Virus record (IMG/VR): IMGVR_UViG_3300034072_002211
Coordinates: 1-64,000 of that record
Length of the DNA: 64,000 nt
Direction: 5' to 3' (one strand)
In this document: positions 8,401-34,691 of the stretch, piece after piece
Layout of the letters: each line of letters opens with the position of its first letter
Position numbering within the stretch: position 1 is the stretch's first letter
The notes under the pieces: generated by a model
Databases searched by the model: none
What the model saw: the letters and a program-made list of their open reading frames with translations, nothing else
Told to the model about the DNA's origin: nothing
Made by a program: the position numbers and the translations under genes

Positions 8401-11400
8401 TCAGCAATGCTGTGACGCCAAACACCTATGGTATCATCGACGTGGTGGACCTCAATGTGGGTCAGGACAACCGCGCACTTGATGATCGTTGGCACTGGCG
8501 CCCAGACATGAAGGCAATTGAATGGCCACTCCGTGACTTCGGTCAGGGCGATGCTCCTCTGCCAACTGCTGGCTATGTGAACCTCGATGAAGTCCGCTTC
8601 ACAGTTGCCACCAAGGCTGAGTTTGAGGACTTCTTCGGTCAGCAAGAAGCTACCGATGAGCCCCTGGAAGCAGGCGACCGCGTTTGGGTTTACGGCATCG
8701 GTTCTGGCAAGCCAGAGGATTCGTGGATGACCTACAAGTTCCACGACACTGGTTACAACATCCTGAACACCTTTATGCCAACCTTTGAGGGTCAGGGCAC
8801 TGTGGTTCAGTTGGACCAGAACATCAAGGGTTATCAGAACGCTGACACAAACCCATGGAACACCACGTTCTATGTGGCTCAGCCTCTGCTGGCAGGTGAA
8901 AACGACGAGAATGGTAACGCAATCTCGGGCGAAATGCTGGTTCTCAAGAACCTCCAGGATGCTGACGTTAACCCACGCACTACCTACAAGCCAAGGGTGC
9001 TGGGCAAGGCAAAGCTGGCTCTCACTGGAACCAGTGGCACCACCGGCTTTGTGATGGGCTTCACTCCTGAGGCTCAGCAGATGATCCACAGGATCAAGGT
9101 TATTGTCGATGAACCATTCGCTGAGGGTTCCACGTTTGAGCTGGGATACCAGAACGACTTGGATGCTTTCGTGGCTATCCGTGAGGAAGATCAGAGGGAC
9201 ATTTATCCAACCAACTACGACAACGAAGCGGTGTTGGTTCAGACCCCTGCGACGTCCTACATGCCACCAAACGTCTCGACTGCTGACGTTGAATTGATCC
9301 GTGTGGGTCGAGTCTCGAACTTCTGTGCTCAGACGGTGGTTGAATGGTATTGGACCCGCAGCGACGGTTCTACGGCAAATGGCTCGGTGACGTTCCTGCG
9401 TCCTAGCGACGTTGTTGGTGACACTGACACGGATGATGCCTACCTGCAGACCATCCAGCTGCCAGTTACCCCTTCTGCTATGTCGGGCACATTGAGGGTT
9501 GTGACCAACGGTGTTCAGACTGACGTTCAGGTTCTGACTTTCCTCCGCACAAACCAGGCCGGCATCAACTCGGTTGATCTGACCCGTGCTGCTACCTATG
9601 AGTTCAGCCGCGCTGTCGGTATGTCCATGTATCCATGGAACACCAACACGGCTGGTGCTGATCGCGAGATGATCGCAACTCTGAACAGCCTTGGCACGCA
9701 GGGTTCTTTGCGCGTTGAGGTCGACTACTTCTACGTCAAGGGTTTTGAGCTTACCGAAGTGCTTAACGGCGCTGTGGTTCCAGCAACTTCCAACGTTGAT
9801 GGCGGCACCGCTGATGTGTTCACTTGGATTAAGACTCGCTACCCAAGCCTGAACGGCATCTCGGGTGCCCTACAGGACGGCGATCTTATTGAGGTTGACT
9901 CGGCACATGACACCCCAGGTCGTTGGGCTGTCTACAAGAAGGTCGTCAGTGAGTGGACCATCGTGCGTCGTCAGAATCGCAAGATCAACAGCGATCTCCT
10001 GACTAGCGCAGGTATCTTCAACAGCCAGGAGAACAAGCTCAAGCTGATTCTTCAGGTCTATGATCCCTACAAGGGCTTCATCCCAGGTGTCGCTGATCGC
10101 GAACTGGAATTCAAGACCTTTAACGATCCTGCGGTTTACAATGACGGTCGTATGATCTGGGGTAAGGAACAGGTTGGTAAGCTGTGGTGGGACCTCAGCG
10201 CTGTTCGCTATCTCGATTATGAAATCTATGACTCTTGGAAGTCGAATGACCACAGTGGTGTAAACTACCGCTGGAAGAACTGGGGCCGTGTTGCTCCAAA
10301 CTCCAGCGTGGATATCTACCAGTGGGTCAGGAGTCCAGTTGCTCCAAATGGCTGGTCTGACTACGTTGAGAGCAAGGCTGATCTGAAGATTGACAACAAG
10401 CCAACTGGCACTGTCGAGGAAGACGCCAAGTATGTCACCGCCACTGAGTGGAATGATGATATCCAAGCTGACGAGACAATCTATTACTTTTGGGTTAAGA
10501 ACCCAACGGTTGTTCCAACTCTGCCTTCGCGCAAGCTGTCGGCAAAGCAGGTCAGCAACATCCTCACGGATCCAGCAGCCAACGACATTCCGTTCTTTGC
10601 GGTCATTGACACCAACAAGGTGATCGTAGGTGGTATCAAGCAGTTCCTCAACGAAACTGATACGGTGCTCAAGATCAAGTGGCTCAAGGATGCTGAGATC
10701 ACCAACAACCACCACAAGCAGTGGATGATTCTGCGTGAGGAAGACGAGCGCAACACCATCAACGACACGCTATGGAACAAGATGCGTGACTCGCTGGTTG
10801 GTTGGGACTCGACTCAGAAGTATGTGCCTGATGAGAAGCTACCAGGGGCTCAGCAGATTGGTGCTATGGTTCGTCCTCGCCAGAGCTGGTTCCCAGCTGA
10901 TGCTTCGCCAAATGGCGGGCAGCGTCCAAGTCGTAGCGCCCGCGCGGCATTCGTGGATTGTCTGAATGACATCCTGAGTGAGCAGCCGTTCATCGACCAG
11001 TGGTATAACTGGAGCGAAGTGTTTGACAAGGGTGAGAACCTGCCAGCACCAGACCGCTACATCACCACTGCGCTGGATCTTGTTGATCTTCGCAACTTGC
11101 TGCCAGCGGCACGCAATATGGTTCAGCCCGGCGAATGCGTGCTCATTCAGAACACTGCAGAAGCTGCTGGTTTCTGGACCCTGTGGAAGCTGGTTGAAAT
11201 TGCTGGCCAGCGCCAGTTTATCCTCGAGGACTTCCAGAAGTGGAGGATGCAGGAGGGCGAACTGTGGAGTCTTGCTGATTGGTATGCTGATGGTTGGTCG
11301 GCTAAGAACTTCCCCAACTATCGTTTCCCAACCACTGCGGCACGCGATGCGGCAGGTAACTTGGACGTGACTCTGCTGAAGGGCACGTTGGTTCAGATTG

Positions 11401-13574
11401 ACCACAGCGATGGCGATGGCCGTTGGACTTGGGACGTCTACACCTCAACCTCGAAGTATCAGGTTGCTAAGGCGCGTTCCACGATGAAGCTCAGCGAAGC
11501 ATTCTATGATGATTCGCGCGTGGAGTTTGGTCCTCGCCAGGTGGCAGCAATCCTAGGCGCAAGTGAAGCAACCCGTATCACACCAGAGAGGATTCAGGAA
11601 CTCGCAGACATCATCAACTATCGCGATGGTTCAAGCGAGATTGAGTTCATGCTGAACACCATGAAGACTATCCTTCTGAACACCCTTCAGAAGAACAGGC
11701 TCTTCTTTGGCATGGTCAAGAGCGCGTTTAAGCAGAGCCAGGTCGTTGACTGGGCATTCAAGACGTCGTTCCTCTACCTGGGCGGCTATTCGGAGACCCT
11801 GCGTCAGAGCCCAGTTGCCTTCAAGGATCAGATTGACAACGTCATTGCCTACTTGGAAGAGGTCAAGCCATACCACGTCAAGATTCGTGAGTATGTGCGC
11901 CGACTGAGCTATGGTCCTGACCTTGCTGATCTGGCAATCACTGACTTTGACAAGCCTGTCTATCCAGACGGTCAGCGCAATCGCGTTCTCGACGTTAAGA
12001 ACGAGAACGACCGCAACATCATGGGTATCAACCGTCCTTGGAAGGATTGGTTCGAGAACTATGAGAAGGCACCAACGCCACTGACCAAGTGGGATCTGGA
12101 GTGGAACGGCGTTCGCAAGATGAACGTGACCATGAAGTTCGACCGCATTTCTTGCGGCACGGTTCGTGGTTGGGATACGGCTCCTTGGGATCCACCACTT
12201 CTCGTCTACAGCCAGATTGGCAGCAATACGCAGAGCCTCAGTCAGCTGAATGCTCTCTACAGGAATGTGAACACCCAGGGTGAGCTCAACTACTTCCGCG
12301 ATCAGACTGTGGAAACCATTGAGGAACGCAACTTCCTGGTGCGTAAGGGCATCATTACACCAGACCGTCCAGGTTCGATTGTAACTGTCCTTCAGGAAGG
12401 CTCCCACTATATGTGGACCGGCAACGAGTGGATCAAGTTCGAGGCCATTGGCTGGGATCAGGATCCCGACATGGGCACCGCAACCCGCATCGAAGATGCT
12501 TACCGTCCTCTGCCTGGTATGACCCGTAAGGATGATCCAGGTGTGATTGCTGGTTGTGAATTTGACGGCACGGTGATGACTGACACGTTCCAATATGACG
12601 CTTGGGACATCTTCGAGTGGGATTCCACTGGCTACAGCCAGGGTATCCGTGAACGTGCTGGCTTCGATCAGGAAACTGTTGATGGCAACACTACTCCTGC
12701 TGATGAGAACGATCCTGCTTACGTGGGCATCACTGGCAATGAGTTCAGCCAGCCAGCAGTGAACGGCGCACGTCCTCATGAGCTGGTTCAGATCCGTGGC
12801 GTTGAAAGCGTTGTGATCAACGTCCGCAAGGCTTCTGGCCCTTACATGAAGAACTTCATGAACGCACAGGGCAAGTGGCAGGACACTCTGGTCAGTCAGA
12901 GCGAAATGACGTTTGTTTCCTGGGATCAGAGCGCCCACTCAGTGACCCTGACGGTGCCTAGCTGGACTGAGGATGCTCAGGGCTACACGCCGCTACATGA
13001 CCCTCAGAACCCTTCTACGGGCTTCATCAAGAATGTCATGTTGAGCAAGGGTTACAGGTCTTCAAGCAATGTGGACATGAGTGCCGCAGGAACCAAGACC
13101 TTCAAGCTTCGCGATCTCAGTGATATTGATGGTATTCCAGCTGGTCTGAGGGGCGACAATGTGAACGTTGCGGTTGTGAACACCAAGGATCCAACCAAGC
13201 GCGCAATTGGTGTTCTGTCAAACAGCAAGGGTAGCGAAAAGAACTGGGACGGTCAGGTCACTATCACGTTCTCAACGGGCTTCGTGAACCTTGGTTCGGG
13301 TAAGAGCTGGAACATCATCCCAGTTGATATGTTCAACGAACCAGGCATCGTGTGGGTAGGTGACGCACGCTTCACCTACAACAGCATGACCCGCAATGGT
13401 TCGACTGTGGTCCTCGAAAATGCCTACCTGTCAGCAAGCACCTTGGCACCACTGAACATCACTGAAGATGGTGTTTCGCTGGTCAAGACTTCGCCGGTGC
13501 TGGACGGCTCTATCCAGCGCAGGATGGCAAGCAACCATTCTGACGCAGTGCCTCACGGCCCTAACAGGCCGTGA
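2475..13574 (+). CDS. Giant virion structural protein (baseplate wedge/hub, 3699 aa)
   Basis: Uninterrupted 3699-aa ORF between gp6-like gene and fibre genes; ends with YLEEVKPYHVKIRE-type segment seen in jumbo-myophage baseplate proteins. Confidence 0.7.
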   Translation: MAKKTNRNPFAFTPIVLDQDNHEKRRVIKQLPAVHQTETLQKFFGASLDHLFDPGKGKPINGYVGQKPLWYDPDQDYYLEEGTDDRTFYQLEASMVSKNVEGQLTDLLPYPDLVNQLRFQGALTNNHNRLFSQDFYTWCPPIDLDKIVNFRQYVWLPIDDVAPTSTFEDGQTDGWILADGTPAPVSGPYSGINKFVGRFAGTPAGDQVVSKTFTLNSAITTANAQFDFLKLDSWDYAGGSAGVRERLVVYINDQVAFEFTPVGISGEGGLSLGSGTISLGDITGTYNVTSPGVDTHLGASATWTDRVYRVTVNLTGTGKTFKLGFGSTTNQAIDDESLGIDNVRVWQSSKTGIELNGPTHKSISPGTTKDYFLPGYGPTGDPELKKFYDLSILTDKLIHAEVDGVSRSFTYVPGQDKITFDQRPAADAEVSISVYSDLENNAIGLPNARPEAFGGVQLSSGMRVIITLDRNSDFKKSNVYIVEGVGSSIFLIKEEDWGAGAAPDYMVMARGAANRNEWSTRNRWFHVSTLPDNMDPDYVLKQRATRPIIEFNRDLELYNYGLRRRLDVDLVVENIEDLNGYMNQFPQDVTLGGVRITTRGTTLINVAAVNPRTGTTYGDVSSIRVMVRNTVNPLLNNNVLVLVNQGGALKLILETDGENPSGEPVYGEVFNVLLGSYSGKNLHWDGTNWVESQHKVKANQAPLFELYDLNGNSLRDEGLYPNSTFKGSRLFGYRIDTTGSRIADQALGLPLIHDNKGQIQFENYLSTETYQYVVGGKFLDIVGFYFHKVGNIDAELETLSNDWYKAPTQTRQFMVDRYVSDGRTKLFNISQNAQDITVTRGRVNESKSFERTTLVEDKDFIRVGRQIMIINIQLGDVIEIRTYSSENPPADAKGHYEVPLNLQANPDNAEVDFMTKGDFYDHFSEIMKKQAGFKGAEYSDNNFRDTPKAPNLGTHIIQHSAGLLKTMLLAGNSQLDITAAIRYADAEYARFKDKFQKKILSYTFTGRLANAENYDVWINTALDELNKGKTKHFAFYLSGMAQNESNRLPTFIPPTPSFLGVYPLYAPELISQEVEGADDVWFVRGHDGSLTLGENETCARVLHALELRIFDSVTATVRLRDRPACDFQEAYSDQYRTNEYSYEEYLQVLRPSFERWSVAYRQDYKVNDLSDTTIESKINRKANPWMWNWSSVPMANGQSVPGHWRGIYEKFYGTQRPDLTPWESLGFAIKPEWWDDRYGPAPYTSENLVLWDDLEQGYIHEGERRGINAKWARPGLQQFMPVDARGRLRHPGPRDLIAYNNVTADTDLSYIPDPTYFTEENGGGWFWKVENDTYLGDEVRGRFETKAEALADYVRSWEDRHDDGVLGCGICPQVPLYSDRAADWNFGDIGPVEQTWRRSSAFAFAAATAGYLMKPAKFVELGWNTQDIGLFFKNTPNEQWLNQDTKGRPQHRELQVHGEVLEDLSLVTKVGIQQWVSDLLASKNTAINENFATRVRGLGSQLSYKVAGFTDSQTLVAVTDAFGRVPSEDITISLYRSPSIREETYSGVAIEYTGRGYEIYGYDALNPYFSVMAPAIHAGRISVGDGAKSAAVPNWNPGTYYSVDITVKYQDNFYRSNKTHTSSSFFEPEFWTQVARPQYADGSTLLWYLEGELDPVAEKIAYGTVLKTPQDVADFLNGYQRYLESRGWIFENLGEDEQEVRDWKQALKSFITWSRADVRQPGDYITLSPSSKLVRFATDQGTIQPIEQIINGLYAIVDQNGQPIDSQATRVVRNDGNITVTCDASTSGIFGLRLYVSELEHVLVFNNKTIFGDTIYSPLLNIKQPRIRLQGFKTVGWKGRIDAPGFIVTGDRLTPNFERAADDFRRFFDIESMENKKLQDRARANFGYEEKEYLNNLLLTPTNQFEFYQGMIQQKGSSTSMRRLLRSNFIRHNKGLKLFEEWAFRVGDYGGQEVTPQLDIQIRQSEFKHNPQLIQFSNAVTPNTYGIIDVVDLNVGQDNRALDDRWHWRPDMKAIEWPLRDFGQGDAPLPTAGYVNLDEVRFTVATKAEFEDFFGQQEATDEPLEAGDRVWVYGIGSGKPEDSWMTYKFHDTGYNILNTFMPTFEGQGTVVQLDQNIKGYQNADTNPWNTTFYVAQPLLAGENDENGNAISGEMLVLKNLQDADVNPRTTYKPRVLGKAKLALTGTSGTTGFVMGFTPEAQQMIHRIKVIVDEPFAEGSTFELGYQNDLDAFVAIREEDQRDIYPTNYDNEAVLVQTPATSYMPPNVSTADVELIRVGRVSNFCAQTVVEWYWTRSDGSTANGSVTFLRPSDVVGDTDTDDAYLQTIQLPVTPSAMSGTLRVVTNGVQTDVQVLTFLRTNQAGINSVDLTRAATYEFSRAVGMSMYPWNTNTAGADREMIATLNSLGTQGSLRVEVDYFYVKGFELTEVLNGAVVPATSNVDGGTADVFTWIKTRYPSLNGISGALQDGDLIEVDSAHDTPGRWAVYKKVVSEWTIVRRQNRKINSDLLTSAGIFNSQENKLKLILQVYDPYKGFIPGVADRELEFKTFNDPAVYNDGRMIWGKEQVGKLWWDLSAVRYLDYEIYDSWKSNDHSGVNYRWKNWGRVAPNSSVDIYQWVRSPVAPNGWSDYVESKADLKIDNKPTGTVEEDAKYVTATEWNDDIQADETIYYFWVKNPTVVPTLPSRKLSAKQVSNILTDPAANDIPFFAVIDTNKVIVGGIKQFLNETDTVLKIKWLKDAEITNNHHKQWMILREEDERNTINDTLWNKMRDSLVGWDSTQKYVPDEKLPGAQQIGAMVRPRQSWFPADASPNGGQRPSRSARAAFVDCLNDILSEQPFIDQWYNWSEVFDKGENLPAPDRYITTALDLVDLRNLLPAARNMVQPGECVLIQNTAEAAGFWTLWKLVEIAGQRQFILEDFQKWRMQEGELWSLADWYADGWSAKNFPNYRFPTTAARDAAGNLDVTLLKGTLVQIDHSDGDGRWTWDVYTSTSKYQVAKARSTMKLSEAFYDDSRVEFGPRQVAAILGASEATRITPERIQELADIINYRDGSSEIEFMLNTMKTILLNTLQKNRLFFGMVKSAFKQSQVVDWAFKTSFLYLGGYSETLRQSPVAFKDQIDNVIAYLEEVKPYHVKIREYVRRLSYGPDLADLAITDFDKPVYPDGQRNRVLDVKNENDRNIMGINRPWKDWFENYEKAPTPLTKWDLEWNGVRKMNVTMKFDRISCGTVRGWDTAPWDPPLLVYSQIGSNTQSLSQLNALYRNVNTQGELNYFRDQTVETIEERNFLVRKGIITPDRPGSIVTVLQEGSHYMWTGNEWIKFEAIGWDQDPDMGTATRIEDAYRPLPGMTRKDDPGVIAGCEFDGTVMTDTFQYDAWDIFEWDSTGYSQGIRERAGFDQETVDGNTTPADENDPAYVGITGNEFSQPAVNGARPHELVQIRGVESVVINVRKASGPYMKNFMNAQGKWQDTLVSQSEMTFVSWDQSAHSVTLTVPSWTEDAQGYTPLHDPQNPSTGFIKNVMLSKGYRSSSNVDMSAAGTKTFKLRDLSDIDGIPAGLRGDNVNVAVVNTKDPTKRAIGVLSNSKGSEKNWDGQVTITFSTGFVNLGSGKSWNIIPVDMFNEPGIVWVGDARFTYNSMTRNGSTVVLENAYLSASTLAPLNITEDGVSLVKTSPVLDGSIQRRMASNHSDAVPHGPNRP

Positions 13575-22293: not shown

Positions 22294-23565
22294 TTAATGA
22301 TACTTAAAGTTTTGAACCACGAGTTCGTCGCCTTGGAAGAACACATCTGCGGAGGTTAGGCGACCACCCTTGCCGCTTCCTGTGTCCATGAAATATGCTA
22401 CACCTCCCTGGCTACCACGGACCAAAAGCGGCTTCACAGTGCTCCTAATGTCATGGCCGACCATGACCTGCTTGCCCTGTGGAATCCTATTCACCCACTC
22501 GTAAATGCGCGTGGGATAGCCGTCTGCCCTCTGGGGAGCCGTGTTGTCGACTTCACCAAAGAGCGCCATGGTCTCGAACTTGCCGGTCAAGCGAGCACTC
22601 GTGATGTCAAACATCTCAGGCTCAGCCGCGCCATGCGTGAAGAGAGTGTTGCCAATGATCCAATGGTGCCTAGAGAACCCTAGCAGGGCCCTGTAGCGCG
22701 TTTCGAACTTACGACGGGCGTCGGATGCTAGAGCTTCAATGGCCCTTGTAGTGACCTTGTTACCGTCACTGAGACGCACTCTTACGTCGTTGTGCTTGAC
22801 TTGTTCTAGCCAACGCTCAATCTTGCGCTCATGATTGCCAATGAGGCTGATGCCACGACCGCGCGTCACAATGCTGTAGACGTGATCCACACACTCAAGT
22901 GAATTGATACCATAATCCAGAATATCGCCCAGGAACACGCAGAAAAGCTTTCTCTGAGTTGCCCACTCGGTAGCATTCTTAAGCGGTTCAATCATACCAT
23001 GGACGTCGCCGACTACCATGATTCCGCGATAGCCACGGTTCTCAATGACCTTCTTGAGATCGATGTTGGTCAGTTTGCTGACAACCTCAAAATCCTCATT
23101 ACGAAAGTCAATGACGTTCGCAATACCATCACCCCTGAGAATATCACGCTCATTGGTGCGGAAAACATGCTCGTGCTTGGAGATTGTACCAGTAGCCGAA
23201 AGCCGCCAACTACGCTTGGCATCTGAGAGCTTGGTCTCCAGATTCCTATTACATACGATATAGAAAATGGGAACGCCAGTTCTCGAGCCAATATCGGCGA
23301 GACTCATACGATCCTTTTTGCGGAGATTGGTAGCATCGACGACCACGCGCTCGCCAAGCTCTAGCTTGAGCTGGGTGCGGCGATGAATCTCCTTGAACAC
23401 CACATCATTGATATCAAGACGCTGATAGTCTCCCGAGAGCTCATAGCGGATTTCTTCGCTGCTCATGATCTCATAGGGATCGAACTTCAAGCTAGTCAGG
23501 TGGGTCTTTCCGCCGCCCGCGGGGCCAACCATGATAACCAAACTATGGAGCGGAATTCTTTTCAT
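22294..23565 (-). CDS. pnkp: Polynucleotide kinase-phosphatase (P-loop kinase + metallophosphoesterase), no ligase domain
   Basis: GPAGGGKT P-loop, VVDATN; VGDVHG, LGDILDYG, GNHE, GHD, DTG phosphoesterase motifs as in bacterial Pnkp N-terminal two domains. Confidence 0.85.
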   Translation of the reverse strand: MKRIPLHSLVIMVGPAGGGKTHLTSLKFDPYEIMSSEEIRYELSGDYQRLDINDVVFKEIHRRTQLKLELGERVVVDATNLRKKDRMSLADIGSRTGVPIFYIVCNRNLETKLSDAKRSWRLSATGTISKHEHVFRTNERDILRGDGIANVIDFRNEDFEVVSKLTNIDLKKVIENRGYRGIMVVGDVHGMIEPLKNATEWATQRKLFCVFLGDILDYGINSLECVDHVYSIVTRGRGISLIGNHERKIERWLEQVKHNDVRVRLSDGNKVTTRAIEALASDARRKFETRYRALLGFSRHHWIIGNTLFTHGAAEPEMFDITSARLTGKFETMALFGEVDNTAPQRADGYPTRIYEWVNRIPQGKQVMVGHDIRSTVKPLLVRGSQGGVAYFMDTGSGKGGRLTSADVFFQGDELVVQNFKYH

Positions 23566-24880: not shown

Positions 24881-25200
24881 TACTGTGCTCCTCCGAAAGT
24901 AAGTTTGAAAAGGACCGCCAGGTCCTGCTTCTCGAAATACCAGCGATTACCGCCGCTGGTGTGCCAGTAGCTACCGGCGCGTTCCTCGCACCACTGCTTC
25001 ATTTCGGCCATCAGGGTGCTGTTGGGCTCCCTCAGGTCGACAGTGGTCATCTCCGGCCAGGCTTCCCGAAGGTGCCGTGACCAGTGCTTGTCTCGAGTGT
25101 TTGCGCCAATGGGTGGACAGAACTTGAGGCCCTGTTCCCGCCAGACCTTAAGGTAGGCCTGGGTAGCGAGGCTTTGTGCGGTTTTGAAATCCGTCGCCAT
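24880..25200 (-). CDS. Hypothetical protein, FxxxxDAxxFKL family
   Basis: EMKQWCEE...WYFEKQDLAVLFKLTFGG. Confidence 0.7.
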   Translation of the reverse strand: MATDFKTAQSLATQAYLKVWREQGLKFCPPIGANTRDKHWSRHLREAWPEMTTVDLREPNSTLMAEMKQWCEERAGSYWHTSGGNRWYFEKQDLAVLFKLTFGGAQ

Positions 25201-25658
25201 CAGTTGATCGCCGAGAATCGCTTGGTGATCGCATGGGCCTGCTCCTTGGTGCAGGGACCAATGCCGAGGGCGGTCACGATGGGGCTACCATCGAACGCGG
25301 TTCCTGGGATCACGTGGTTCTTGTCGATAATCAGCGAGGTGATCAGACCAGCAGCCTGGGCTTCTTCGTAAGCGCGCTGGAGAGCGGCTTCGTTCTTAGC
25401 CTTGAGGATGATCTGGGTGCCGATGAAGTCGGGGCCCTGATAGACCCGGAGCAACTCGGGATCGCGACGGCTCGCGAGGAGCACACAATTCTTGGCCGCG
25501 TGACAAGCCTGGCTTGCCATCTTACCCGGAGCCATGTCCAGGTCGCCGCGAATGATGCTGTAGATGCGAAGCTTTTCCGAGGCAGCTTCGAACGCCTCAT
25601 AGTCGTTGTCGTTGTCGTAACGAGCAGCGGCTTCCTACAGGAACGAATTGGTAAGCAT
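25200..25658 (-). CDS. pth2: Peptidyl-tRNA hydrolase type 2 (Pth2) with in-frame TAG at codon 8 (25635-25637); read-through or pseudogene
   Basis: LRIYSIIRGDLDMAPGKMASQACHA, IILKA, IID...T.LGIGP = Pth2 motifs; ATG 25658 preceded by AGGAG; translation MLTNSFL*EAAARYDNDNDYEAFEAASEKLRIYS... Confidence 0.85.
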
Positions 25659-26234: not shown

Positions 26235-26675
26235 TTAGATCAATCCACGCTCATGGCACTCTTCGAGCACGCCACGATAGACGCGCATGTTGGGCTGATA
26301 CGGACCCCGGCCAAAATACTTGGCATCGTCCCCGTTGAGGGCCTTGTCGAGGGCCGCGCCAATGGCTGCGCTGCGGCACCGCCCCATGAGGCAGTGGATG
26401 TAGATGACGCTCACATCCTTGCTTTTCATGTCCTCCACGAAGTCGAGGACAGCTTCAGCATGGGTGGGATTGAACAGAATGCGAGCTTCCTCTTCGGGCT
26501 CACCATTCTTGTATTCGTCAATGTCATGGAACTTGAGGTTGAGCCTTCCAGTCAGGTGCTCGTTCTCATAGACCTCCGGAAAGTCACCTTTCTCGCAGAT
26601 GCTGATGAGCGCCCAAGGCTTGTCGGGCGGAGTTGCGGTCATCATGACCGCACGGCTGTAGACTACGAACTTCAT
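26235..26675 (-). CDS. Protein-tyrosine/dual-specificity phosphatase-like protein
   Basis: IYIHCLMGRCRSAAIG = HCxxGxxRS P-loop; ISI...LNLKFHDID. Confidence 0.85.
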   Translation of the reverse strand: MKFVVYSRAVMMTATPPDKPWALISICEKGDFPEVYENEHLTGRLNLKFHDIDEYKNGEPEEEARILFNPTHAEAVLDFVEDMKSKDVSVIYIHCLMGRCRSAAIGAALDKALNGDDAKYFGRGPYQPNMRVYRGVLEECHERGLI

Positions 26676-26705: not shown

Positions 26706-26981
26706 TCAACCCTCGATGCTGGAGATCTCGATCTCCAGATAATAGTCTTCAGCCATCATCTGGAGAACTCCGCCTTCGATCCATGCTTCTTGGCGAGGAT
26801 CGAACTCAGCCCAATCCAGAGAAGCCGGCGACACTGTGACGGCCTTTCCTTTGTGGTGTTGGACGAAGAGATCCATGGGAGCGAAAGCCGGTGGATTCTC
26901 GGCATCACGAGCTCGATACTTGCGGGCGCTGTAGGTCTGGCCATTGACCAGCTTGTCAGCTAGATCTGAACCCTTGCTCAT
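26706..26981 (-). CDS. Hypothetical protein
   Basis: 91 aa; ATGA overlap with upstream synthetase-like gene. Confidence 0.65.
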   Translation of the reverse strand: MSKGSDLADKLVNGQTYSARKYRARDAENPPAFAPMDLFVQHHKGKAVTVSPASLDWAEFDPRQEAWIEGGVLQMMAEDYYLEIEISSIEG

Positions 26982-27796
26982 TCACTCGGCTCCCTGTTGA
27001 TGTCGTCACGCTGGGCCTGTTGCCAGTTGTAGACGCAACGGTCGAGGCCGATGGCAATCTCGAGCACGAGCGCATCCTTTTCGACCAGACCTTTCTTGCT
27101 CTGGAAAGCCAGCTTCTGAGGGAAATCAGTCCGCTTGCTGATGCTGCAGACTTCCATCCACTTGTCGCCGTTCCAGACCTCGACGTCCATGGTGCGGAGC
27201 GAATAAGCGGGCAGACGATCACTCTCCACAAGCCGCGTCGGCAAGTGAATCTGAGAAGCGATCATCTTGCGGACCTTCTCCAGCATCTCTTCCTGATAGT
27301 CGAGAGCTGTGTCGGCGCTGTAGACGCACTGAAACTCCTGCTGGTAGAATTCCTTGAGCCGCATGTGCTTGGTTGGCTGGACGATCTCGCGCCGGAAACT
27401 CTTACCGGCCTGCCAGACGCAGAAGGGCGGGAAGATGCTCAGTTGATTGTTGAGCAGGTATTGCGCGTAGGCGTAGCTGCCGGGCGTCGTTTCGGGCCGC
27501 AGAGCCAGTTCACGGTAGCCTTGCCGCGCCTGCGTCAGAGCCTCGAACTCTTCTTCAGTTTTGGCAGGAGCATCCACGTCTTCCTGAACCCAGATATCCT
27601 GTTCGGTATAGTTGACGTTGAGGAGGTCGCGCGGAGTCAGCAGCGGTGCTTCCACGAAGAAGAACTTCCACTGTGGGTTGAGGGCAACAAGGTCCCGCTG
27701 AACTGTCTGGGCGAAGAAGTCCCGGAAGTGTTCGCGGAGCCGGATCTCTTCCTCACTCCAGAAGATCAGGCCGTTGATGTCAAAGGTATTCTGCAT
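26978..27796 (-). CDS. Minimal class II aminoacyl-tRNA synthetase, GlyRS (alpha2-type)-like catalytic core without anticodon-binding domain
   Basis: LRPETT (GlyRS LRPETAQ), motif 2 QAGKSFRRE...MRLKEFYQQE, WMEVCSISKRTDF, motif 3 VLEIAIGLDR; ends about 15 aa after motif 3 (272 aa). Confidence 0.8.
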   Translation of the reverse strand: MQNTFDINGLIFWSEEEIRLREHFRDFFAQTVQRDLVALNPQWKFFFVEAPLLTPRDLLNVNYTEQDIWVQEDVDAPAKTEEEFEALTQARQGYRELALRPETTPGSYAYAQYLLNNQLSIFPPFCVWQAGKSFRREIVQPTKHMRLKEFYQQEFQCVYSADTALDYQEEMLEKVRKMIASQIHLPTRLVESDRLPAYSLRTMDVEVWNGDKWMEVCSISKRTDFPQKLAFQSKKGLVEKDALVLEIAIGLDRCVYNWQQAQRDDINREPSE

Positions 27797-27797
27797 G

Positions 27798-28178
27798 TCA
27801 GACCAACTTCATTGGCGTGGGCAGGGCAACGTAGGCGCCTGTCTTGGGATAACGGATGTGGGTTGCGGTGGTCGTCCCGTCCTCTTGGATCTCCACGCGG
27901 AAGTAGATCTCCAGCCCCGAATAGCGGAAGTTGTCGCTACAGCTTTCCGGGAGGTTGAGCTGGATGGCGTCATGATCCCGCGAGTCCTTGGTGGACCCTA
28001 CCTGATAGTCGTCCCAGATGATGGGAAACTTGGGCTTCTTGGCCTCTTCCTCACGGCGAGCCAGCTCAGCCTGCATCCGCTGGATCTGCCCCTGTAGGTC
28101 CTCGTCGCTCTTCCCGGCGAAAGGATCGCGCTTGGGCGCGGTATCGTCAATACCACCGGGAAGAGGAGAAATGCTCAT
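27798..28178 (-). CDS. Hypothetical protein
   Basis: Start reassigned to MSISPL (ATGA overlap at 28175-28178); stop 1 nt before synthetase ATG. Confidence 0.7.
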   Translation of the reverse strand: MSISPLPGGIDDTAPKRDPFAGKSDEDLQGQIQRMQAELARREEEAKKPKFPIIWDDYQVGSTKDSRDHDAIQLNLPESCSDNFRYSGLEIYFRVEIQEDGTTTATHIRYPKTGAYVALPTPMKLV

Positions 28179-28716: not shown

Positions 28717-28792
28717 TGGCGCTCCCGGTGGGGCTCGAACCCACGACCCGCAGATTTAGAGTCCGCTGCTCTGCCAGCTGAGCTACGGGAGC
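28717..28792 (-). tRNA. Amber suppressor tRNA, anticodon CUA
   Basis: 76 nt: GCTCCCG-TA-GCTC-AGCTGGCA-GAGC-A-GCGGA-CTCTAAA-TCTGC-GGGTC-GTGGG-TTCGAGC-CCCAC-CGGGAGC-G-CCA; 7-bp acceptor, D-loop GG, U33, anticodon CTA at 28757-28759, encoded CCA. Confidence 0.95.
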
Positions 28793-28803
28793 ATGTAACC
28801 TGT

Positions 28804-29262
28804 TTAGGACTTTTTCTCCAAAGCGTCAAGCCGTGCGGCAATTTCCTGGACCAGTCGCAGCGTCTCCTCAGAGTTCTGCTTGATCTGCTCCTGCTCATCA
28901 TGAGTCCAGGCGTTGCTGTCTACGATCATGTGGGCGGCCAGCTTGGCCGTGATGATCGGTGCCACGAGGAAGGAGCAGATGTGCATGAAGATTGCGCCGA
29001 AGAATCGGCTGCTCGTGTGGGTTGGCGAATAGTCGCCATAGCCGACGGTGGTCGCCGTGACGCTGGCCCACCAGTAGCCCTCTGCGAGCTTCTTGCCCTC
29101 GATGAAGCTGAACATGACCGCTGCGAGGGTCATGATCAGTAGGTATGCGATCAACAGGCTGAATAACCGGTTGAACATCTTTTGCATCAGCGTGAGCTCT
29201 TGTCCCGCATGGACTGCGGTGCTCAGGATGTCGCTACCGGCTTGTTCGATCTGTCTACGCAT
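28804..29262 (-). CDS. Two-TM potassium channel (KcsA/Ion_trans_2-like)
   Basis: YWWASVTATTVGYGDYSP selectivity filter flanked by TM helices; GGAGG RBS. Confidence 0.9.
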   Translation of the reverse strand: MRRQIEQAGSDILSTAVHAGQELTLMQKMFNRLFSLLIAYLLIMTLAAVMFSFIEGKKLAEGYWWASVTATTVGYGDYSPTHTSSRFFGAIFMHICSFLVAPIITAKLAAHMIVDSNAWTHDEQEQIKQNSEETLRLVQEIAARLDALEKKS

Positions 29263-29360
29263 TTGTGCCTCCTTTCCTGAACCGTAACACAGGAGAGCAG
29301 CCTGTCAACAGAAAAGGGCGCCAGTTTCCTGACGCCCTTATAACCGTAGTGAGCTGTCGG

Positions 29361-29951: not shown

Positions 29952-31304
29952 TTAGGACTTCCTCCATTCGGTGCCGTGAACGCCATCGGCCAGCGTGATC
30001 CCCATATCAGTGAGCTGCTGACGGATCCTATCAGCCTCCCCGTAGTTTTTGGCCCTACGTGCCTCTTGACGAGCCGCAATTAGAGCCTCGACAGCCTCCT
30101 TGTCAACACCAAGTGTCCGCCATTGGTGCGGAGTATGGTTAAAGAGACCGAGAAACTGACCAGCCTTGATCAGTCGAGCCTTTGCGGGCGCCTTGTCCTT
30201 GGCATGGTCGAGGTCATCTGCGAGTCTATGGAGGACAGACAGAGCTGTGGTGGTATTGAGGTCCTGCGATAGCGCAGAGATGATCTCTGCTGGCACATCA
30301 ACGTCCTCGGCGTAGTTGAGCTCGTCGTGCCGATAGAGGACCTCATAGAGCCCGTCGAGGGCACGATGCGCCATGTCCAGCTTGTCCATAGTAAAGTCCA
30401 TGGGCGAGCGGTAATGTGACTGCATGAAGAGGTAACGAACGCTCTCCGCGGGATACTGATCGAAAAGCTCGTTCAAGAGGATCACGTTGCCGCGGCTCTT
30501 GCTCATCTTTTCGCCATTCACTGTCAGGAGACCGTTGTGTATCCAGTAGTTGGCAAGCGGAGCACCGTTGTGGTGGCACTGGCTCTGAGCGCACTCGGCT
30601 TCATGATGCGGAAAGCGCAGATCCTGACCACCACCGTGAATGTCGATTGTTGGACGTGCGAACGTGTGGTTGATCATGGCCGAGCATTCAATATGCCAAC
30701 CCGGCCGCCCCTGGCCCCAAGGCGAGAACCAGCTTGGCTCGCCCAGCTTTGCGGGTTTCCAGAGCACGAAATCTCTGGGGTCCTTTTTCTTGGGATCGAC
30801 CTCAACCCGTGAACCCGCTTCCGTGTGGGTGTGATTTGCGAGACCGGGATGGGGATTGCTGGGAACGTGGAAGAAAACCTCCCCGTCCACCGCATAGGCA
30901 TAGCCGTGATCGATCAGTGCGATGATCATGGCAATCATACCAGGAATGTGCTGGGTGGCCCTTGGTTCCACAGTGGGCGGCAAGCAAGCCAGAGCCTCGA
31001 GATCCATATGGTAGGCCGCGAGTGCCGTGTCAGTGATCTGGCTGATCGGAACACCGCGCTCGATTGATGCTGCGATGATCTTGTCATCCACGTCCGTGAT
31101 GTTGCGGACATAGCGGACTTCGCGCTCTCCGTAGACGTGGCGCAGAAGCCGGAAGACCTGGTCGAACACGATGGCTGGGCGCGCGTTACCGATATGCGCT
31201 GGCCCATAGACCGTTGGACCACAGACATACATAGCCACCTGCTGCGAAAACGCAGGCTTGAACTCTTCCACTTGGCGGCTCTGACTGTTGTAGAATGTGA
31301 TCAT
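29952..31304 (-). CDS. cysS: Cysteinyl-tRNA synthetase
   Basis: MYVCGPTVY, HIGN, NITDVDDKII, GRPGWHIECSAM, DIHGGGQDLRFPHHEAE, KMSKS, C-terminal ADRIRQQL...I.L.D. Confidence 0.97.
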   Translation of the reverse strand: MITFYNSQSRQVEEFKPAFSQQVAMYVCGPTVYGPAHIGNARPAIVFDQVFRLLRHVYGEREVRYVRNITDVDDKIIAASIERGVPISQITDTALAAYHMDLEALACLPPTVEPRATQHIPGMIAMIIALIDHGYAYAVDGEVFFHVPSNPHPGLANHTHTEAGSRVEVDPKKKDPRDFVLWKPAKLGEPSWFSPWGQGRPGWHIECSAMINHTFARPTIDIHGGGQDLRFPHHEAECAQSQCHHNGAPLANYWIHNGLLTVNGEKMSKSRGNVILLNELFDQYPAESVRYLFMQSHYRSPMDFTMDKLDMAHRALDGLYEVLYRHDELNYAEDVDVPAEIISALSQDLNTTTALSVLHRLADDLDHAKDKAPAKARLIKAGQFLGLFNHTPHQWRTLGVDKEAVEALIAARQEARRAKNYGEADRIRQQLTDMGITLADGVHGTEWRKS

Positions 31305-33488: not shown

Positions 33489-34691
33489 TCACTCGCTTAG
33501 ACTGTTGTCCCGGTAATCAGACCAGCTCGCCCCTCCCCAGAGGTGCCGCATGGCATTGACCTTGCTCTGACTACCAAGCTGCGAGCCCACAAACTTGATG
33601 ATGTTGGCGTAAACGCCTTCTTCGCCCTCGTCCAAACGATCCCAGGCAGTGAACTTGAAGCCCTGGAGACCATCATTGACCTTGGTCACCTTCTCCGCGA
33701 ACTTCTTCTTGCTGCCGTTGAGGTTGTCGAACTCAGCCTGGACTTCCCAGAAGATGTCACTGGCCAGCTTCTTCAACCCGGTGAAGATGGTCTTGGCGAA
33801 GTCGTCGCTAGCCTTGACTAGATCCTCGGGCAGGAAGGGCTTTGCATCATCCAGCTTCTCGTCCACAATGAGACGGATCACATCCTTCTCATGGGTCAAG
33901 TGCTCAAGCGTCTTGTGGAGTAGCGAATACCACTCGCCCTTCAACTTGAGCATGGTGCCATCGGGCCAACGCAGAACGTCGCCTTCTTCACCCTCGATTG
34001 CTCGGATCTCTTCAATCATCTCCTCGTCCAGGCCATCCTGGAGAGAAGAGAACGAGCAGCAAGGAATGCCATAAGCGGCTGCTTCTTCCTTGAGCTCAGG
34101 TGCATCCATGTATTCACCGGTGGTGTTGTCACGGATTGCGGTGAGAACCAGCTGAGTCACAGGATAGTCGATGACGATCCGCTGAATACGAGAGCACCAC
34201 TCAAAGATTGGAGTCTTGCCTTGGCTCATCCAATACTTGCAGAACTCGTGATACTCAACACGGTCCTTGGCCCACTCGTCAACGGGCGCAGCCACGCCAG
34301 TGAGGCCCATCTTAGTGCAGAAGCGCACCTGACCCTTGATCAACAGAGGCGTGATCATAGATCCGTCTAGCTTCTTGAAGCGACGGTAGGGCTTGGACCA
34401 GTCCACATTCTCAGGAAGCGTTTCGTTGCGCTCACCGAGGTTGAAGAACTTGTGATACTTGCGAGCAAGGACCTTGCCAGTGGCCGTGTCAAACGTGATG
34501 CCGCGGCATTCACGCAGGAGCGCCGTCCGGCGATCGGTCACAGGTGGGAAGGTGTCCTCGAAGTTGACCAGATAGTTGACGACCGTGTAGCCGTGCTCTT
34601 CGTCAACCTTGACCACGAACTCTTCACGGCCCTCAATGGCCTCAAGGATTTCACTCAAGTGAGTGATCGTGGGAAACTGATAGTGAGTCAT
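33489..34691 (-). CDS. rnl1: RNA ligase 1 (T4 Rnl1-like)
   Basis: ECRGITFD...KYHKFFNLGE, motif I KLDGS, IFEWCS, EGDV, LKLKGEWY. Confidence 0.9.
   Translation of the reverse strand: MTHYQFPTITHLSEILEAIEGREEFVVKVDEEHGYTVVNYLVNFEDTFPPVTDRRTALLRECRGITFDTATGKVLARKYHKFFNLGERNETLPENVDWSKPYRRFKKLDGSMITPLLIKGQVRFCTKMGLTGVAAPVDEWAKDRVEYHEFCKYWMSQGKTPIFEWCSRIQRIVIDYPVTQLVLTAIRDNTTGEYMDAPELKEEAAAYGIPCCSFSSLQDGLDEEMIEEIRAIEGEEGDVLRWPDGTMLKLKGEWYSLLHKTLEHLTHEKDVIRLIVDEKLDDAKPFLPEDLVKASDDFAKTIFTGLKKLASDIFWEVQAEFDNLNGSKKKFAEKVTKVNDGLQGFKFTAWDRLDEGEEGVYANIIKFVGSQLGSQSKVNAMRHLWGGASWSDYRDNSLSE

What the first reader, a model, noticed from the sequence alone, without database searches (positions are those of the whole stretch)
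26978..27796. Anticodon-domain-less GlyRS-like synthetase
Motifs 1-3 of class II aaRS with GlyRS-specific LRPET and R-T-D signatures are present, but the protein is about half the size of alpha2 GlyRS. It lacks the C-terminal anticodon-binding domain and the large insertion. Some glycine-pocket positions look altered (EQxExE to YQQEFQ; EPS to EIA). Such minimal enzymes could charge a tRNA by acceptor stem only (e.g. the co-transcribed CUA tRNA or nuclease-damaged tRNAs), acylate a carrier protein as amino acid:carrier-protein ligases do, or synthesise Ap4A-type signals.
Basis: partly seen in the sequence, partly recalled or inferred. Interest (0 to 1): 0.75.

Follow-up and report, generated by a model that had tools for sequence, protein, structure and literature searches.

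The report
Core-only glycyl-tRNA synthetase-like phage enzyme
A jumbo phage carries a half-size copy of glycyl-tRNA synthetase that keeps every catalytic residue but has no tRNA-anticodon reader; it belongs to a large, uncharacterised family spread through big phages and some soil bacteria, and what it attaches glycine to is still unknown.

Summary
The ORF at 26978-27796 (-), 272 aa, is real. It is the catalytic core of an alpha2-type glycyl-tRNA synthetase. Motifs 1-3 and all GlyRS-specific ATP and glycine ligands are present. The anticodon-binding domain and the insertion domain are absent.

It is not a one-off. More than 1,800 90%-identity clusters of 220-290 aa proteins exist. Most lie on very large phage contigs, with a few in a small temperate-like phage. 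One shallow clade sits in Rhizobium, Devosia and Phenylobacterium chromosomes, where NCBI names it 'aminoacyl--tRNA ligase-related protein'. I found no paper describing the family.

No separate anticodon-domain subunit, GlyQ or conserved carrier protein turned up in the complete relatives. No neighbouring gene is conserved across the family. In phages the gene sits among tRNA genes in about 45% of dereplicated loci, against a 5-14% background, and beside other synthetases and tRNA-repair enzymes.

The link to the CUA tRNA holds only in the window's own clade.

Best reading, about 0.45: a minimal GlyRS that makes Gly-AMP and charges tRNAGly by reading the acceptor end. Main rival, about 0.3: glycine goes to a non-tRNA acceptor.

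The parts
26978..27796 (-). CDS, 272 aa: core-only GlyRS-like class II synthetase (P0001)
27629..27667 (-). Motif 1 (aa 44-56, KFFFVEAPLLTPR, Pro51), preceded by the long helix aa 15-39. This is the class II dimer-interface element.
   Evidence: AF2 secondary structure; E49 nearly invariant
27485..27502 (-). LRPETT (aa 99-104). E102 is the first glycine-ammonium ligand of GlyRS and is invariant.
27323..27406 (-). Motif 2 (aa 131-158, GKSFRRE...RLKEFYQQEFQ). R135, E137, F150, E154 and Q156 are invariant.
27125..27211 (-). GlyRS-specific ATP-binding strands (aa 196-224, PAYS..TMDVE..WMEV..SISKRTD). Y198, D204, E215, R222 and D224 are invariant.
27029..27067 (-). E-I-A plus motif 3 (aa 244-256, VLEIAIGLDRCVY). 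E246, D252 and R253 are invariant. A248 replaces the Ser of the canonical EPS.
27503..27628 (-). Variable, lower-confidence linker (aa 57-98) at the site of GlyRS insertion domain 1. It is about 25-95 aa long in different family members, acidic and helical, with no recognisable domain.
   Evidence: pLDDT 68-84; alignment; long variants
28717..28792 (-). tRNA with CUA anticodon, G73, encoded CCA. It lies 921 nt upstream on the same strand. This is context and probably not the dedicated substrate.
29952..31304 (-). Full-length CysRS (context: translation island)
   Evidence: TIGR00435, 455.8 bits against cut-off 340; syntenic in 14 loci
25200..25535 (-). PTH2-type peptidyl-tRNA hydrolase (context)
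   Evidence: syntenic in 13 loci

Best explanation
The gene encodes a stand-alone catalytic core of an alpha2-type glycyl-tRNA synthetase.

Shown:
- It has the class II fold with motifs 1-3.
- It keeps every residue that GlyRS uses to bind ATP and the glycine ammonium group.
- It lacks the anticodon-binding domain and the insertion domain.

Inferred, strongly: it binds ATP and glycine and forms glycyl-adenylate.

Inferred, moderately: it then transfers glycine to the 3' end of tRNAGly, phage-encoded and/or host. It would recognise only the acceptor end, meaning G1-C72, C2-G71, G3-C70 and U73, which nearly all phage tRNAGly genes found next to family members share. This would give the phage its own supply of Gly-tRNAGly during infection. 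That supply would be independent of the host's unrelated alpha2beta2 GlyQS enzyme.

The gene is part of a mobile 'translation and tRNA maintenance' gene set of large phages. One lineage of it has been captured by alphaproteobacterial chromosomes.
For: Fold and homology:
- Pfam class II core above its cut-off.
- GlyRS is the best hit in NCBIfam, the PDB and Swiss-Prot models.
- AF2 model pLDDT 93.3.

Active site:
- 16 invariant and 15 nearly invariant positions in 64 diverse members. They map onto the GlyRS ATP and glycine ligands and on nothing else.
- The motif 2 loop, which reads the acceptor end in class IIa enzymes, keeps GlyRS-like length and sequence (compare HMRLKEF with N. equitans LLLRLREF).

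Stand-alone status:
- No gene other than the gene itself is conserved across the 85 phage loci or across the bacterial contexts, of which there are at least five.
- No HGTP anticodon domain in this genome or in 4 of 5 complete relatives.
- No GlyQ in any of five genomes.

tRNA link:
- A tRNA gene lies within 1 kb in 25 of 56 dereplicated phage loci, against 5-14% expected. 158 of 159 nearby tRNAs are on the same strand.
- Annotated immediate neighbours are enriched for CysRS, an Ile/Val-type synthetase, an AlaRS-like core, RtcB, RlaP and RNA ligase.
- The window itself carries CysRS, PTH2, RNA ligase and a ValRS-like gene.
- Only 10 proteins are shared by four unrelated jumbo-phage lineages. 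This one is the best conserved, and another is the tRNA CCA-adding enzyme.
- All five genomes encode tRNAGly. Nearly all phage tRNAGly have GCG...CGC-U73, which matches the bacterial glycine identity set (PMC9976931).

Origin: Caulobacter, a host of phages carrying the gene, has GlyQ (control list). The phage enzyme is therefore not a copy of the host enzyme.
Against: - No assay exists for any family member.
- Every characterised natural class II paralogue that lost its anticodon-binding domain (EpmA/PoxA, AsnA, HisZ, amino acid:carrier-protein ligases) uses a non-tRNA acceptor or none. This is my own knowledge, partly covered by PMC9437257.
- C35 and C36 are major glycine identity elements, and this protein cannot read them.
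- From memory, and not checked here, a Thermus GlyRS lacking its C-terminal domain activates glycine but does not charge tRNA.
- The family is acidic (median pI 5.6; this protein pI 5.0). It has few conserved basic residues outside the active site.
- Bacterial homologues have no tRNA genes nearby (3 of 80 loci).
- A deep-branching member sits in the early ERF-SSB module of a small phage contig; no tRNA scan was run there.
- tRNAGly is not clearly enriched over other tRNAs next to the gene: 15 of 94 within 1 kb against 44 of 388 in the flanks.
- The tRNA-docking prediction was not run by the tool.
Confidence: 0.45

Rival explanations
1. Glycine ligase with a non-tRNA acceptor. The enzyme makes Gly-AMP and transfers glycine to a protein side chain (as EpmA lysylates EF-P), to a host carrier protein, or to a small molecule. 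The purpose would be host take-over or anti-defence.
For: - All known domain-stripped class II paralogues work this way (own knowledge; PMC9437257).
- The protein is acidic and has no extra RNA-binding module.
- The gene persists as a lone gene in Rhizobium, Devosia and Phenylobacterium chromosomes away from tRNA genes.
- It also sits in the early ERF-SSB module of a small phage.
- In another phage an AlaRS-like 308-aa core lies directly beside the GlyRS-like core. Gly and Ala are the pair of amino acids that the rhizobial carrier-protein ligases activate.
Against: - No acceptor candidate is conserved next to the gene in phages or bacteria.
- A PP-binding protein passes its cut-off in only one of five genomes, far from the gene.
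- Similarity to aa:CP ligases is insignificant (E 0.026 and 0.44).
- The conserved positions are only those of the GlyRS active site, with no family-specific extra patch.
- The strong association with tRNA arrays and synthetases in phages would be unexplained.
Confidence: 0.3
2. Nucleotide-signal or adenylate enzyme. The core is used for Ap4A-type dinucleoside polyphosphate synthesis or for making Gly-AMP itself, not for transfer of glycine.
For: - Human GlyRS is known to make Ap4A (own knowledge).
- In one bacterial context (6 loci), HIT and NUDIX genes follow on the same strand. Both families hydrolyse adenylates or ApnA.
- NUDIX and NAD-salvage genes lie within a few kb in Brevundimonas and Caulobacter phages.
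Against: - The HIT and NUDIX matches are barely over their cut-offs (22.6 and 23.4 bits) and occur in one context only.
- The three glycine-binding glutamates are invariant. That is not expected if glycine were dispensable.
Confidence: 0.08
3. Dedicated synthetase for the neighbouring amber-suppressor (CUA) tRNA. It would charge that tRNA with glycine or a small amino acid through acceptor-stem recognition, an orthogonal pair like PylRS-tRNAPyl.
For: - Same strand, 921 nt apart, with no terminator-like site between them.
- The arrangement is conserved in Phosso and about 9 close relatives.
- All syntenic CUA tRNAs whose encoded CCA end was read in register have G73.
- An enzyme without an anticodon domain is indifferent to the anticodon.
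Against: - Adjacency is seen only in the near clade.
- Domovoi and CcrSC carry the gene but no CUA tRNA.
- The first three acceptor pairs of the syntenic CUA tRNAs differ (GCU, CGC, GUC, GCG, GCC, GUU, CUU), so no shared acceptor identity exists beyond G73.
- The window's long ORFs read through with the standard code, so no recoding is needed.
- The family profile matches GlyRS at 1e-20 and PylRS only at about 1e-5.
Confidence: 0.05
4. Catalytically inactive structural or regulatory paralogue, like HisZ or the GlyRS-like accessory subunit of mitochondrial DNA polymerase.
For: - The GlyRS fold has been reused this way before (own knowledge). The Atlas lists DNA polymerase gamma-2 as a distant feature neighbour, score 0.82, which is chance level.
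- One member lies beside ERF and SSB.
Against: - All ATP and glycine ligands are invariant over a very deep family. Inactive paralogues lose them.
- There is no anticodon-like domain, which POLG2 retains.
Confidence: 0.03

Closest known systems
Alpha2-type glycyl-tRNA synthetase (e.g. Mycobacterium 8sld/8t5n, Thermus 1ati/1b76, Nanoarchaeum 5z5e, human 2pme)
   Same: Same class IIa catalytic fold. Same motif 1-3 and the same GlyRS-only signatures: RPET, FRxE, EFxQxE, Y..D.E, R-T-D and E-x-(S/A)-x-G-x-D-R. These are the best sequence and structure matches in every library.
   Different: - About 190-230 residues shorter.
- No HGTP anticodon-binding domain.
- Insertion domain 1 is reduced to a variable linker and the hairpin before motif 3 is shortened.
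- About 20% identity.
- Far below the curated GlyRS model cut-offs: 61 against 312 bits, and 38 against 243 bits.
- Ala instead of Ser after the third glutamate, and Thr instead of Ala after RPET.
'Aminoacyl--tRNA ligase-related protein' of Rhizobium, Shinella, Labrys, Devosia and Phenylobacterium (NCBI placeholder name, function unknown)
   Same: Same family. 53-57% identical over the whole length, 249-250 aa, same invariant residues. It forms a single well-supported clade next to the window/Phosso clade.
   Different: - Chromosomal, lone gene in at least five different contexts (three of them in Rhizobium).
- No tRNA genes nearby.
- Shallow branches compared with the phage radiation.
EpmA/PoxA (GenX), the LysRS-derived core that lysylates EF-P
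   Same: Same design principle: a class II catalytic core that shed its anticodon-binding domain while keeping adenylation chemistry.
   Different: Derived from LysRS (class IIb), not GlyRS. Its acceptor EF-P is known, and no comparable acceptor is identified here. There is no sequence match.
Amino acid:[carrier-protein] ligases (Bll0957, Atu2573)
   Same: Truncated class II synthetase homologues of Rhizobiales that activate glycine or alanine.
   Different: They are SerRS-like and encoded beside their carrier protein. Similarity here is not significant (E 0.026 and 0.44), and no carrier protein is linked.
GlyQ, the alpha subunit of the bacterial alpha2beta2 GlyRS
   Same: A catalytic-core-only subunit of about 300 aa that makes Gly-AMP.
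   Different: An unrelated subclass (AlaRS-like). It needs the tRNA-binding GlyS subunit. No GlyQ or GlyQ-type match exists in the phage genomes.

Membership tests
Class II aminoacyl-tRNA synthetase catalytic domain (Pfam tRNA-synt_2b) | Model score above the curated cut-off | tested here: met
   43.6 bits against cut-off 29.3, aa 91-255; also found by genome search at 44.7 bits
Class II aminoacyl-tRNA synthetase catalytic domain (Pfam tRNA-synt_2b) | Antiparallel beta-sheet fold with motifs 1, 2 and 3 | tested here: met
   AF2 pLDDT 93.3 with the expected helix and strand order. Foldseek probability 1.00 to GlyRS and ProRS cores. Motif residues P51, R135 and R253.
Alpha2 glycine--tRNA ligase (TIGR00389 / NF003211) | GlyRS-specific ATP and glycine ligands: three Glu, motif 2 Arg, R-T-D, motif 3 Arg | tested here: met
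   E102, R135, E137, F150, E154, R222, D224, E246 and R253 are invariant in 64 members and align to the GlyRS signatures
Alpha2 glycine--tRNA ligase (TIGR00389 / NF003211) | C-terminal HGTP anticodon-binding domain | tested here: not met
   The protein ends 19 residues after motif 3. There is no PF03129 match in the protein or anywhere in the held genome.
Alpha2 glycine--tRNA ligase (TIGR00389 / NF003211) | Insertion domain between motif 1 and the RPET strand | tested here: not met
   Only a 40-aa variable linker with lower pLDDT. The structural alignment spans 1-260 against ~20-343 of GlyRS.
Alpha2 glycine--tRNA ligase (TIGR00389 / NF003211) | Curated equivalog score | tested here: not met
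   61.1 against 312 bits (NF003211); 37.7 against 243.3 bits (TIGR00389)
Alpha2 glycine--tRNA ligase (TIGR00389 / NF003211) | Charges tRNAGly with glycine | not testable with these tools
   The tRNA docking job was not folded by the tool. Only indirect genomic association with tRNA genes is available.
Alpha2 glycine--tRNA ligase (TIGR00389 / NF003211) | Homodimer through motif 1 | not tested
Amino acid:[carrier-protein] ligase | Significant similarity to the family model, and an adjacent carrier protein | tested here: not met
   NF005479 E 0.026, 13.5 against 357 bits; PDB 3mey E 0.44. PP-binding passes its cut-off in 1 of 5 genomes and lies far away.
Pyrrolysyl-tRNA synthetase (partner of a CUA tRNA) | Best similarity to the PylRS core, and universal pairing with a CUA tRNA | tested here: not met
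   Family profile E about 3e-5 to PylRS against 2e-20 to GlyRS. CUA tRNA is missing from 2 of 4 complete phage genomes that carry the gene.
Inactive synthetase paralogues (HisZ, POLG2) | Loss of catalytic residues; POLG2 keeps the anticodon-like domain | tested here: not met
   Catalytic residues are invariant. There is no anticodon-like domain.
'Aminoacyl--tRNA ligase-related protein' family (NCBI name), including the phage members | Full-length homology, 220-290 aa, shared invariant set | tested here: met
   1,821 and 1,720 cluster hits. 53-57% identity to the Rhizobium, Devosia and Phenylobacterium proteins. One tree.

The most novel reading that the evidence does not exclude
The family is not a translation enzyme at all. 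It would be a phage-borne glycine ligase that uses Gly-AMP to modify a host or phage macromolecule, or to make a nucleotide signal, as a take-over or counter-defence device. It has spread horizontally among unrelated phages and been domesticated by alphaproteobacteria. That would make it the first GlyRS-derived member of the non-tRNA class II ligases, alongside EpmA, AsnA and the carrier-protein ligases.
Probability: 0.35. Interest if true: 0.85.

Novelty: new variant of a known kind. Interest (0 to 1): 0.62.

Why it matters
Domain-stripped synthetase paralogues have repeatedly turned out to do unexpected chemistry, such as EF-P lysylation, asparagine synthesis, carrier-protein loading and histidine regulation. 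None derived from alpha2 GlyRS has been described.

This one is unusually widespread. It is the best-conserved of only ten proteins shared by four unrelated jumbo-phage lineages, and some soil bacteria have taken it up.

If it charges tRNAGly, it is a natural example of a synthetase working from the acceptor-stem 'operational code' alone. It would also be a ready-made minimal, anticodon-blind enzyme. If it does not, a new glycylation target in phage-host conflict is waiting to be found.

Cultured phage-host pairs (Sinorhizobium/Phosso, Xanthomonas/XbC2, Caulobacter/CcrSC, Brevundimonas/Domovoi) and Rhizobium genetics make it directly testable.

Tried and rejected
- **tRNA docking.** Complex prediction with two copies of the protein plus the phage's own tRNAGly(GCC) was accepted but not folded. 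The tool gives no verdict for RNA partners. This is no evidence either way, and the one job is spent.
- **Conserved partner gene.** BLAST clustering of all ORFs in 85 phage loci and 80 bacterial loci found none.
  - The 91-aa ORF overlapping the stop codon (ATGA, 26706-26981) has no homologue in any locus.
  - The Cys-phosphatase downstream is confined to the near clade. It is unrelated to the Rit1_C-like neighbour of a distant member.
- **Split anticodon-domain subunit.** None found.
- **Other GlyRS genes in the phages.** None found.
- **Carrier protein.** Not conserved.
- **PHROGs.** No family match.
- **Literature.** Five searches found no description of the family. The Mom paper (glycyl-tRNA used to modify DNA, PMC13219725) shows phages can spend Gly-tRNAGly outside translation. 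No Mom search was run here.
- **Transcript evidence.** Only the source subsurface DNA metagenome holds the sequence.
- **The 232-aa ORF upstream of the small-phage member.** No similarity to the family or to any solved structure.
Full report
**1. What is in the sequence**

- It passes the Pfam cut-off for the class II core shared by Gly/His/Pro/Ser/Thr synthetases.
- In NCBIfam its best hits are three GlyRS models, all far below their cut-offs because they cover the core only.
- In the PDB its best hits are Mycobacterium, Nanoarchaeum, Thermus and human GlyRS.
- An AlphaFold2 model built on 64 family members is confident (mean pLDDT 93.3, pTM 0.90).
- Foldseek places the model on GlyRS first and ProRS second in the PDB. 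In Swiss-Prot models it matches only bacterial alpha2 GlyRS. Residues 1-260 cover roughly GlyRS residues 20-343, the catalytic domain up to the start of the anticodon-binding domain.
- No HGTP anticodon domain is detectable in the protein or anywhere in the 277 kb of the genome that is held.

**2. The active site is intact and the 'altered pocket' is overstated**

In an alignment of 64 members down to about 30% identity, 16 positions are invariant: E102, P124, Q129, R135, E137, F150, E154, Q156, Y198, D204, E215, R222, D224, E246, D252 and R253 (M1 is also invariant). HMMER alignments to solved GlyRS show where these fall:
- the RPET glutamate;
- the motif 2 FRxE arginine and glutamate;
- the adenine-stacking Phe;
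- the second glutamate of EFxQxE;
- the Y..D.E and R-T-D strands that are peculiar to GlyRS;
- the third glutamate, and motif 3.

Q156 and the residue after E246 are also Q and L in the solved N. equitans GlyRS. Only Ser-to-Ala at 248 is typical of the family, and a few members keep Ser.

Nothing outside the canonical GlyRS catalytic set is conserved. I infer that the protein forms glycyl-adenylate. This is inference from conservation, not a measurement.

**3. It is a large family, not an oddity**

- The 90%-cluster database holds 1,821 relatives with E <= 0.001. All 120 listed are 243-325 aa, many on contigs of 250-960 kb. JGI labels some 'glycyl-tRNA synthetase'.
- An exhaustive profile-free search of 50% representatives finds 285 clusters; the near-full-length ones are short too, about 210-350 aa. 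The longest carry a bigger acidic, helical linker at the insertion-1 site and no added domain.
- Named phages with a homologue are Sinorhizobium phage Phosso (61% identity), Xanthomonas phage XbC2, five Brevundimonas phages, the Caulobacter Bertelyvirus group, and two 635-kb metagenomic phages.
- The window is syntenic with Phosso: CysRS, a hypothetical gene, tRNA-CUA, a hypothetical gene, the GlyRS-like gene, then a phosphatase and PTH2 further on.
- The window carries a family B DNA polymerase, a tail-fibre-like protein and RNA ligase, so it is a jumbo phage.

**4. Is there a partner or a missing subunit?**

I fetched 80 IMG/VR loci, took four loci from named phage genomes and added the window itself, then clustered all ORFs.
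- Only the gene itself is universal. CysRS appears in 14 loci and PTH2 in 13.
There is no HGTP anticodon domain in a complete 462-kb near relative, nor in XbC2, Domovoi or CcrSC. Phosso's single hit lies inside a 665-aa ORF.
- None of five genomes has GlyQ.
- PP-binding passes its cut-off only in XbC2, about 177 kb from the gene.
- Whole-genome comparison of Phosso, XbC2, Domovoi and CcrSC finds just ten shared proteins: PhoH, an AAA_28 kinase-like protein, lysozyme, dNMP kinase, ribonucleotide reductase, glutaredoxin, TelA, the tRNA CCA-adding enzyme, an HNH protein and this one. This one has the highest identity of the ten, 42-47%.

So it works alone, or with something universal in the cell.

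**5. Association with tRNA biology in phages**

- 34 of 85 loci have a tRNA gene within 1 kb.
- After dereplication at 75% identity the figure is 25 of 56, and 158 of 159 tRNAs within 3 kb are on the same strand.
- In five whole genomes only 5-14% of placements would lie that close to a tRNA. The binomial p is 5e-8 against the highest background. Relatedness of the loci inflates this figure.
- I scanned 87 same-strand immediate neighbours against Pfam in one call. Most have no family. The recurrent families are synthetases: class I Ile/Leu/Met/Val-type, CysRS, and the AlaRS core. Single cases of RtcB, RlaP and RNA ligase also appear.
- The window adds a full CysRS, a PTH2 hydrolase, an Rnl1-type RNA ligase and a ValRS-like protein. 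The genome also has a full SerRS.

**6. The CUA tRNA**

ARAGORN calls it tRNA-Pyl only because of the anticodon.
- It is adjacent in the window's near clade only: it is the nearest tRNA in 11 of 85 loci.
- Domovoi and CcrSC have the gene but no CUA tRNA, while all five genomes have tRNAGly.
- The syntenic CUA tRNAs share G73, but their first three acceptor pairs differ from phage to phage. An enzyme confined to the acceptor end could not treat them as one identity class.
- By contrast, phage tRNAGly genes near family members almost all read GCG...CGC-U73. This is the bacterial glycine set of G1-C72, C2-G71 and U73 (PMC9976931).
- No terminator-like site lies between the tRNA and the gene, so co-transcription is possible but not shown.

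**7. Bacterial and small-phage members**

- A scan of one genome per prokaryotic species found 120 relatives, of which 80 were kept. Most lie in Rhizobium chromosomes, others in Shinella, Labrys, Devosia and Phenylobacterium. They are 53-57% identical to the query.
- NCBI names them 'aminoacyl--tRNA ligase-related protein'.
- They sit as lone genes in at least five different contexts that are stable within a clade. Examples are a site beside a DD-carboxypeptidase and a giant repeat protein, and a site between a DUF459/lytic transglycosylase pair and gltDB. A third context has weak HIT and NUDIX genes downstream.
- Almost none has tRNA genes nearby.
- In a maximum-likelihood tree, the 14 sequences from the named bacterial genera (Rhizobium, Labrys, Devosia, Phenylobacterium) form one shallow clade with SH-aLRT 99. 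It is nested in the deep phage and metagenome radiation and lies next to the window/Phosso clade. The tree is midpoint-rooted only. This is most simply read as capture from a phage.
- A deep-branching member lies in a 24-35 kb temperate-like phage contig between ERF-SSB and a nuclease/endolysin block; I ran no tRNA scan there. Another sits beside a Rit1_C-like protein.

These settings fit less easily with a pure translation role, and they keep the non-tRNA rival alive.

**8. Weighing**

For tRNAGly charging:
- an intact GlyRS active site, including a GlyRS-like motif 2 loop;
- no partner and no alternative acceptor;
- strong placement in phage translation and tRNA-repair islands;
- hosts that use the unrelated GlyQS enzyme (Caulobacter rings for GlyQ in the control list).

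Against:
- the precedent of all characterised domain-stripped class II paralogues;
- the importance of C35 and C36 for glycine identity;
- the acidic surface;
- the bacterial and small-phage contexts.

I put the minimal-GlyRS reading at about 0.45, a non-tRNA acceptor at about 0.3, a nucleotide signal at about 0.08, a CUA-specific enzyme at about 0.05, and an inactive paralogue at about 0.03. The rest is unassigned.

**9. Novelty**

No paper in the searchable library describes the family. A review of synthetase paralogues lists no GlyRS-derived truncated paralogue. It is a new variant of a known kind: a synthetase-core paralogue with an unknown acceptor.

Noticed in passing
window 57945-59333 (-): A 462-aa ValRS-like protein (506 bits against cut-off 704). 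It aligns to valS profile positions 351-685 and has an anticodon-binding domain, but it seems to lack the CP1 editing domain and the C-terminal coiled coil. This is a second 'stripped' synthetase in the same phage.
   Followed up: partly
window 28717-28792 (-); own genome 253634-253712 (-): Two tRNAs with CUA (amber-reading) anticodons in a phage whose long ORFs read with the standard code. The first has G73 and an encoded CCA, and is syntenic in Phosso and near relatives. Its amino-acid identity is undetermined.
   Followed up: partly
window 26235-26675 (-): A 146-aa protein with a Cys-phosphatase signature (HCLMGRCRS). It has a weak DSPc match and belongs to phrog_5614. It lies directly downstream of the GlyRS-like gene in 9 near relatives only. 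Its substrate is unknown.
   Followed up: partly
window 25200-25535 (-): An archaeal/eukaryotic-type peptidyl-tRNA hydrolase (PTH2), kept in 13 related loci.
   Followed up: partly
window 33489-34691 (-) and 22294-23565 (-): A T4 Rnl1-type RNA ligase, and a 423-aa protein combining a P-loop kinase domain (AAA_33) with a metallophosphoesterase. Together they look like a tRNA healing-and-sealing set.
   Followed up: no
window 2475-13574 (+): A giant 3,699-aa ORF with no Pfam match at all. The 774-aa ORF before it (151-2475) also has none.
   Followed up: no
window 28804-29262 (-): A 152-aa potassium-channel-like membrane protein (Ion_trans_2, phrog_14690) between CysRS and the CUA tRNA. A strong terminator-like hairpin lies just upstream at 29314-29339.
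   Followed up: no
window 27020-27958 (+): A 312-aa antisense ORF overlapping the gene has 'homologues' in 29 loci. This is a shadow of the conserved sense gene, not a gene.
   Followed up: yes
L071 9091-10014 (+): In another large phage, a 308-aa protein matching only the first ~250 positions of AlaRS (catalytic core, no tRNA-recognition or editing domains) lies immediately upstream of the GlyRS-like gene. A second immediate neighbour in the set of 87 also matches the AlaRS core model.
   Followed up: partly
L249-L252 (e.g. L249 6017-8702): A deep-branching family member in a 24-35 kb temperate-like phage. The order is Cro, ERF recombinase, SSB, an unknown 232-aa ORF overlapping by 14 nt, then the GlyRS-like gene. 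This is an early-region setting; no tRNA scan was run on these loci.
   Followed up: partly
L178 9030-10336 (+) and five similar loci: In one Rhizobium-type chromosomal context, weak HIT and NUDIX genes follow the homologue on the same strand.
   Followed up: partly
PMC7162821 (literature): [quoted passage not shown] This is an independent hint that big phages interfere with host glycine charging.
   Followed up: no
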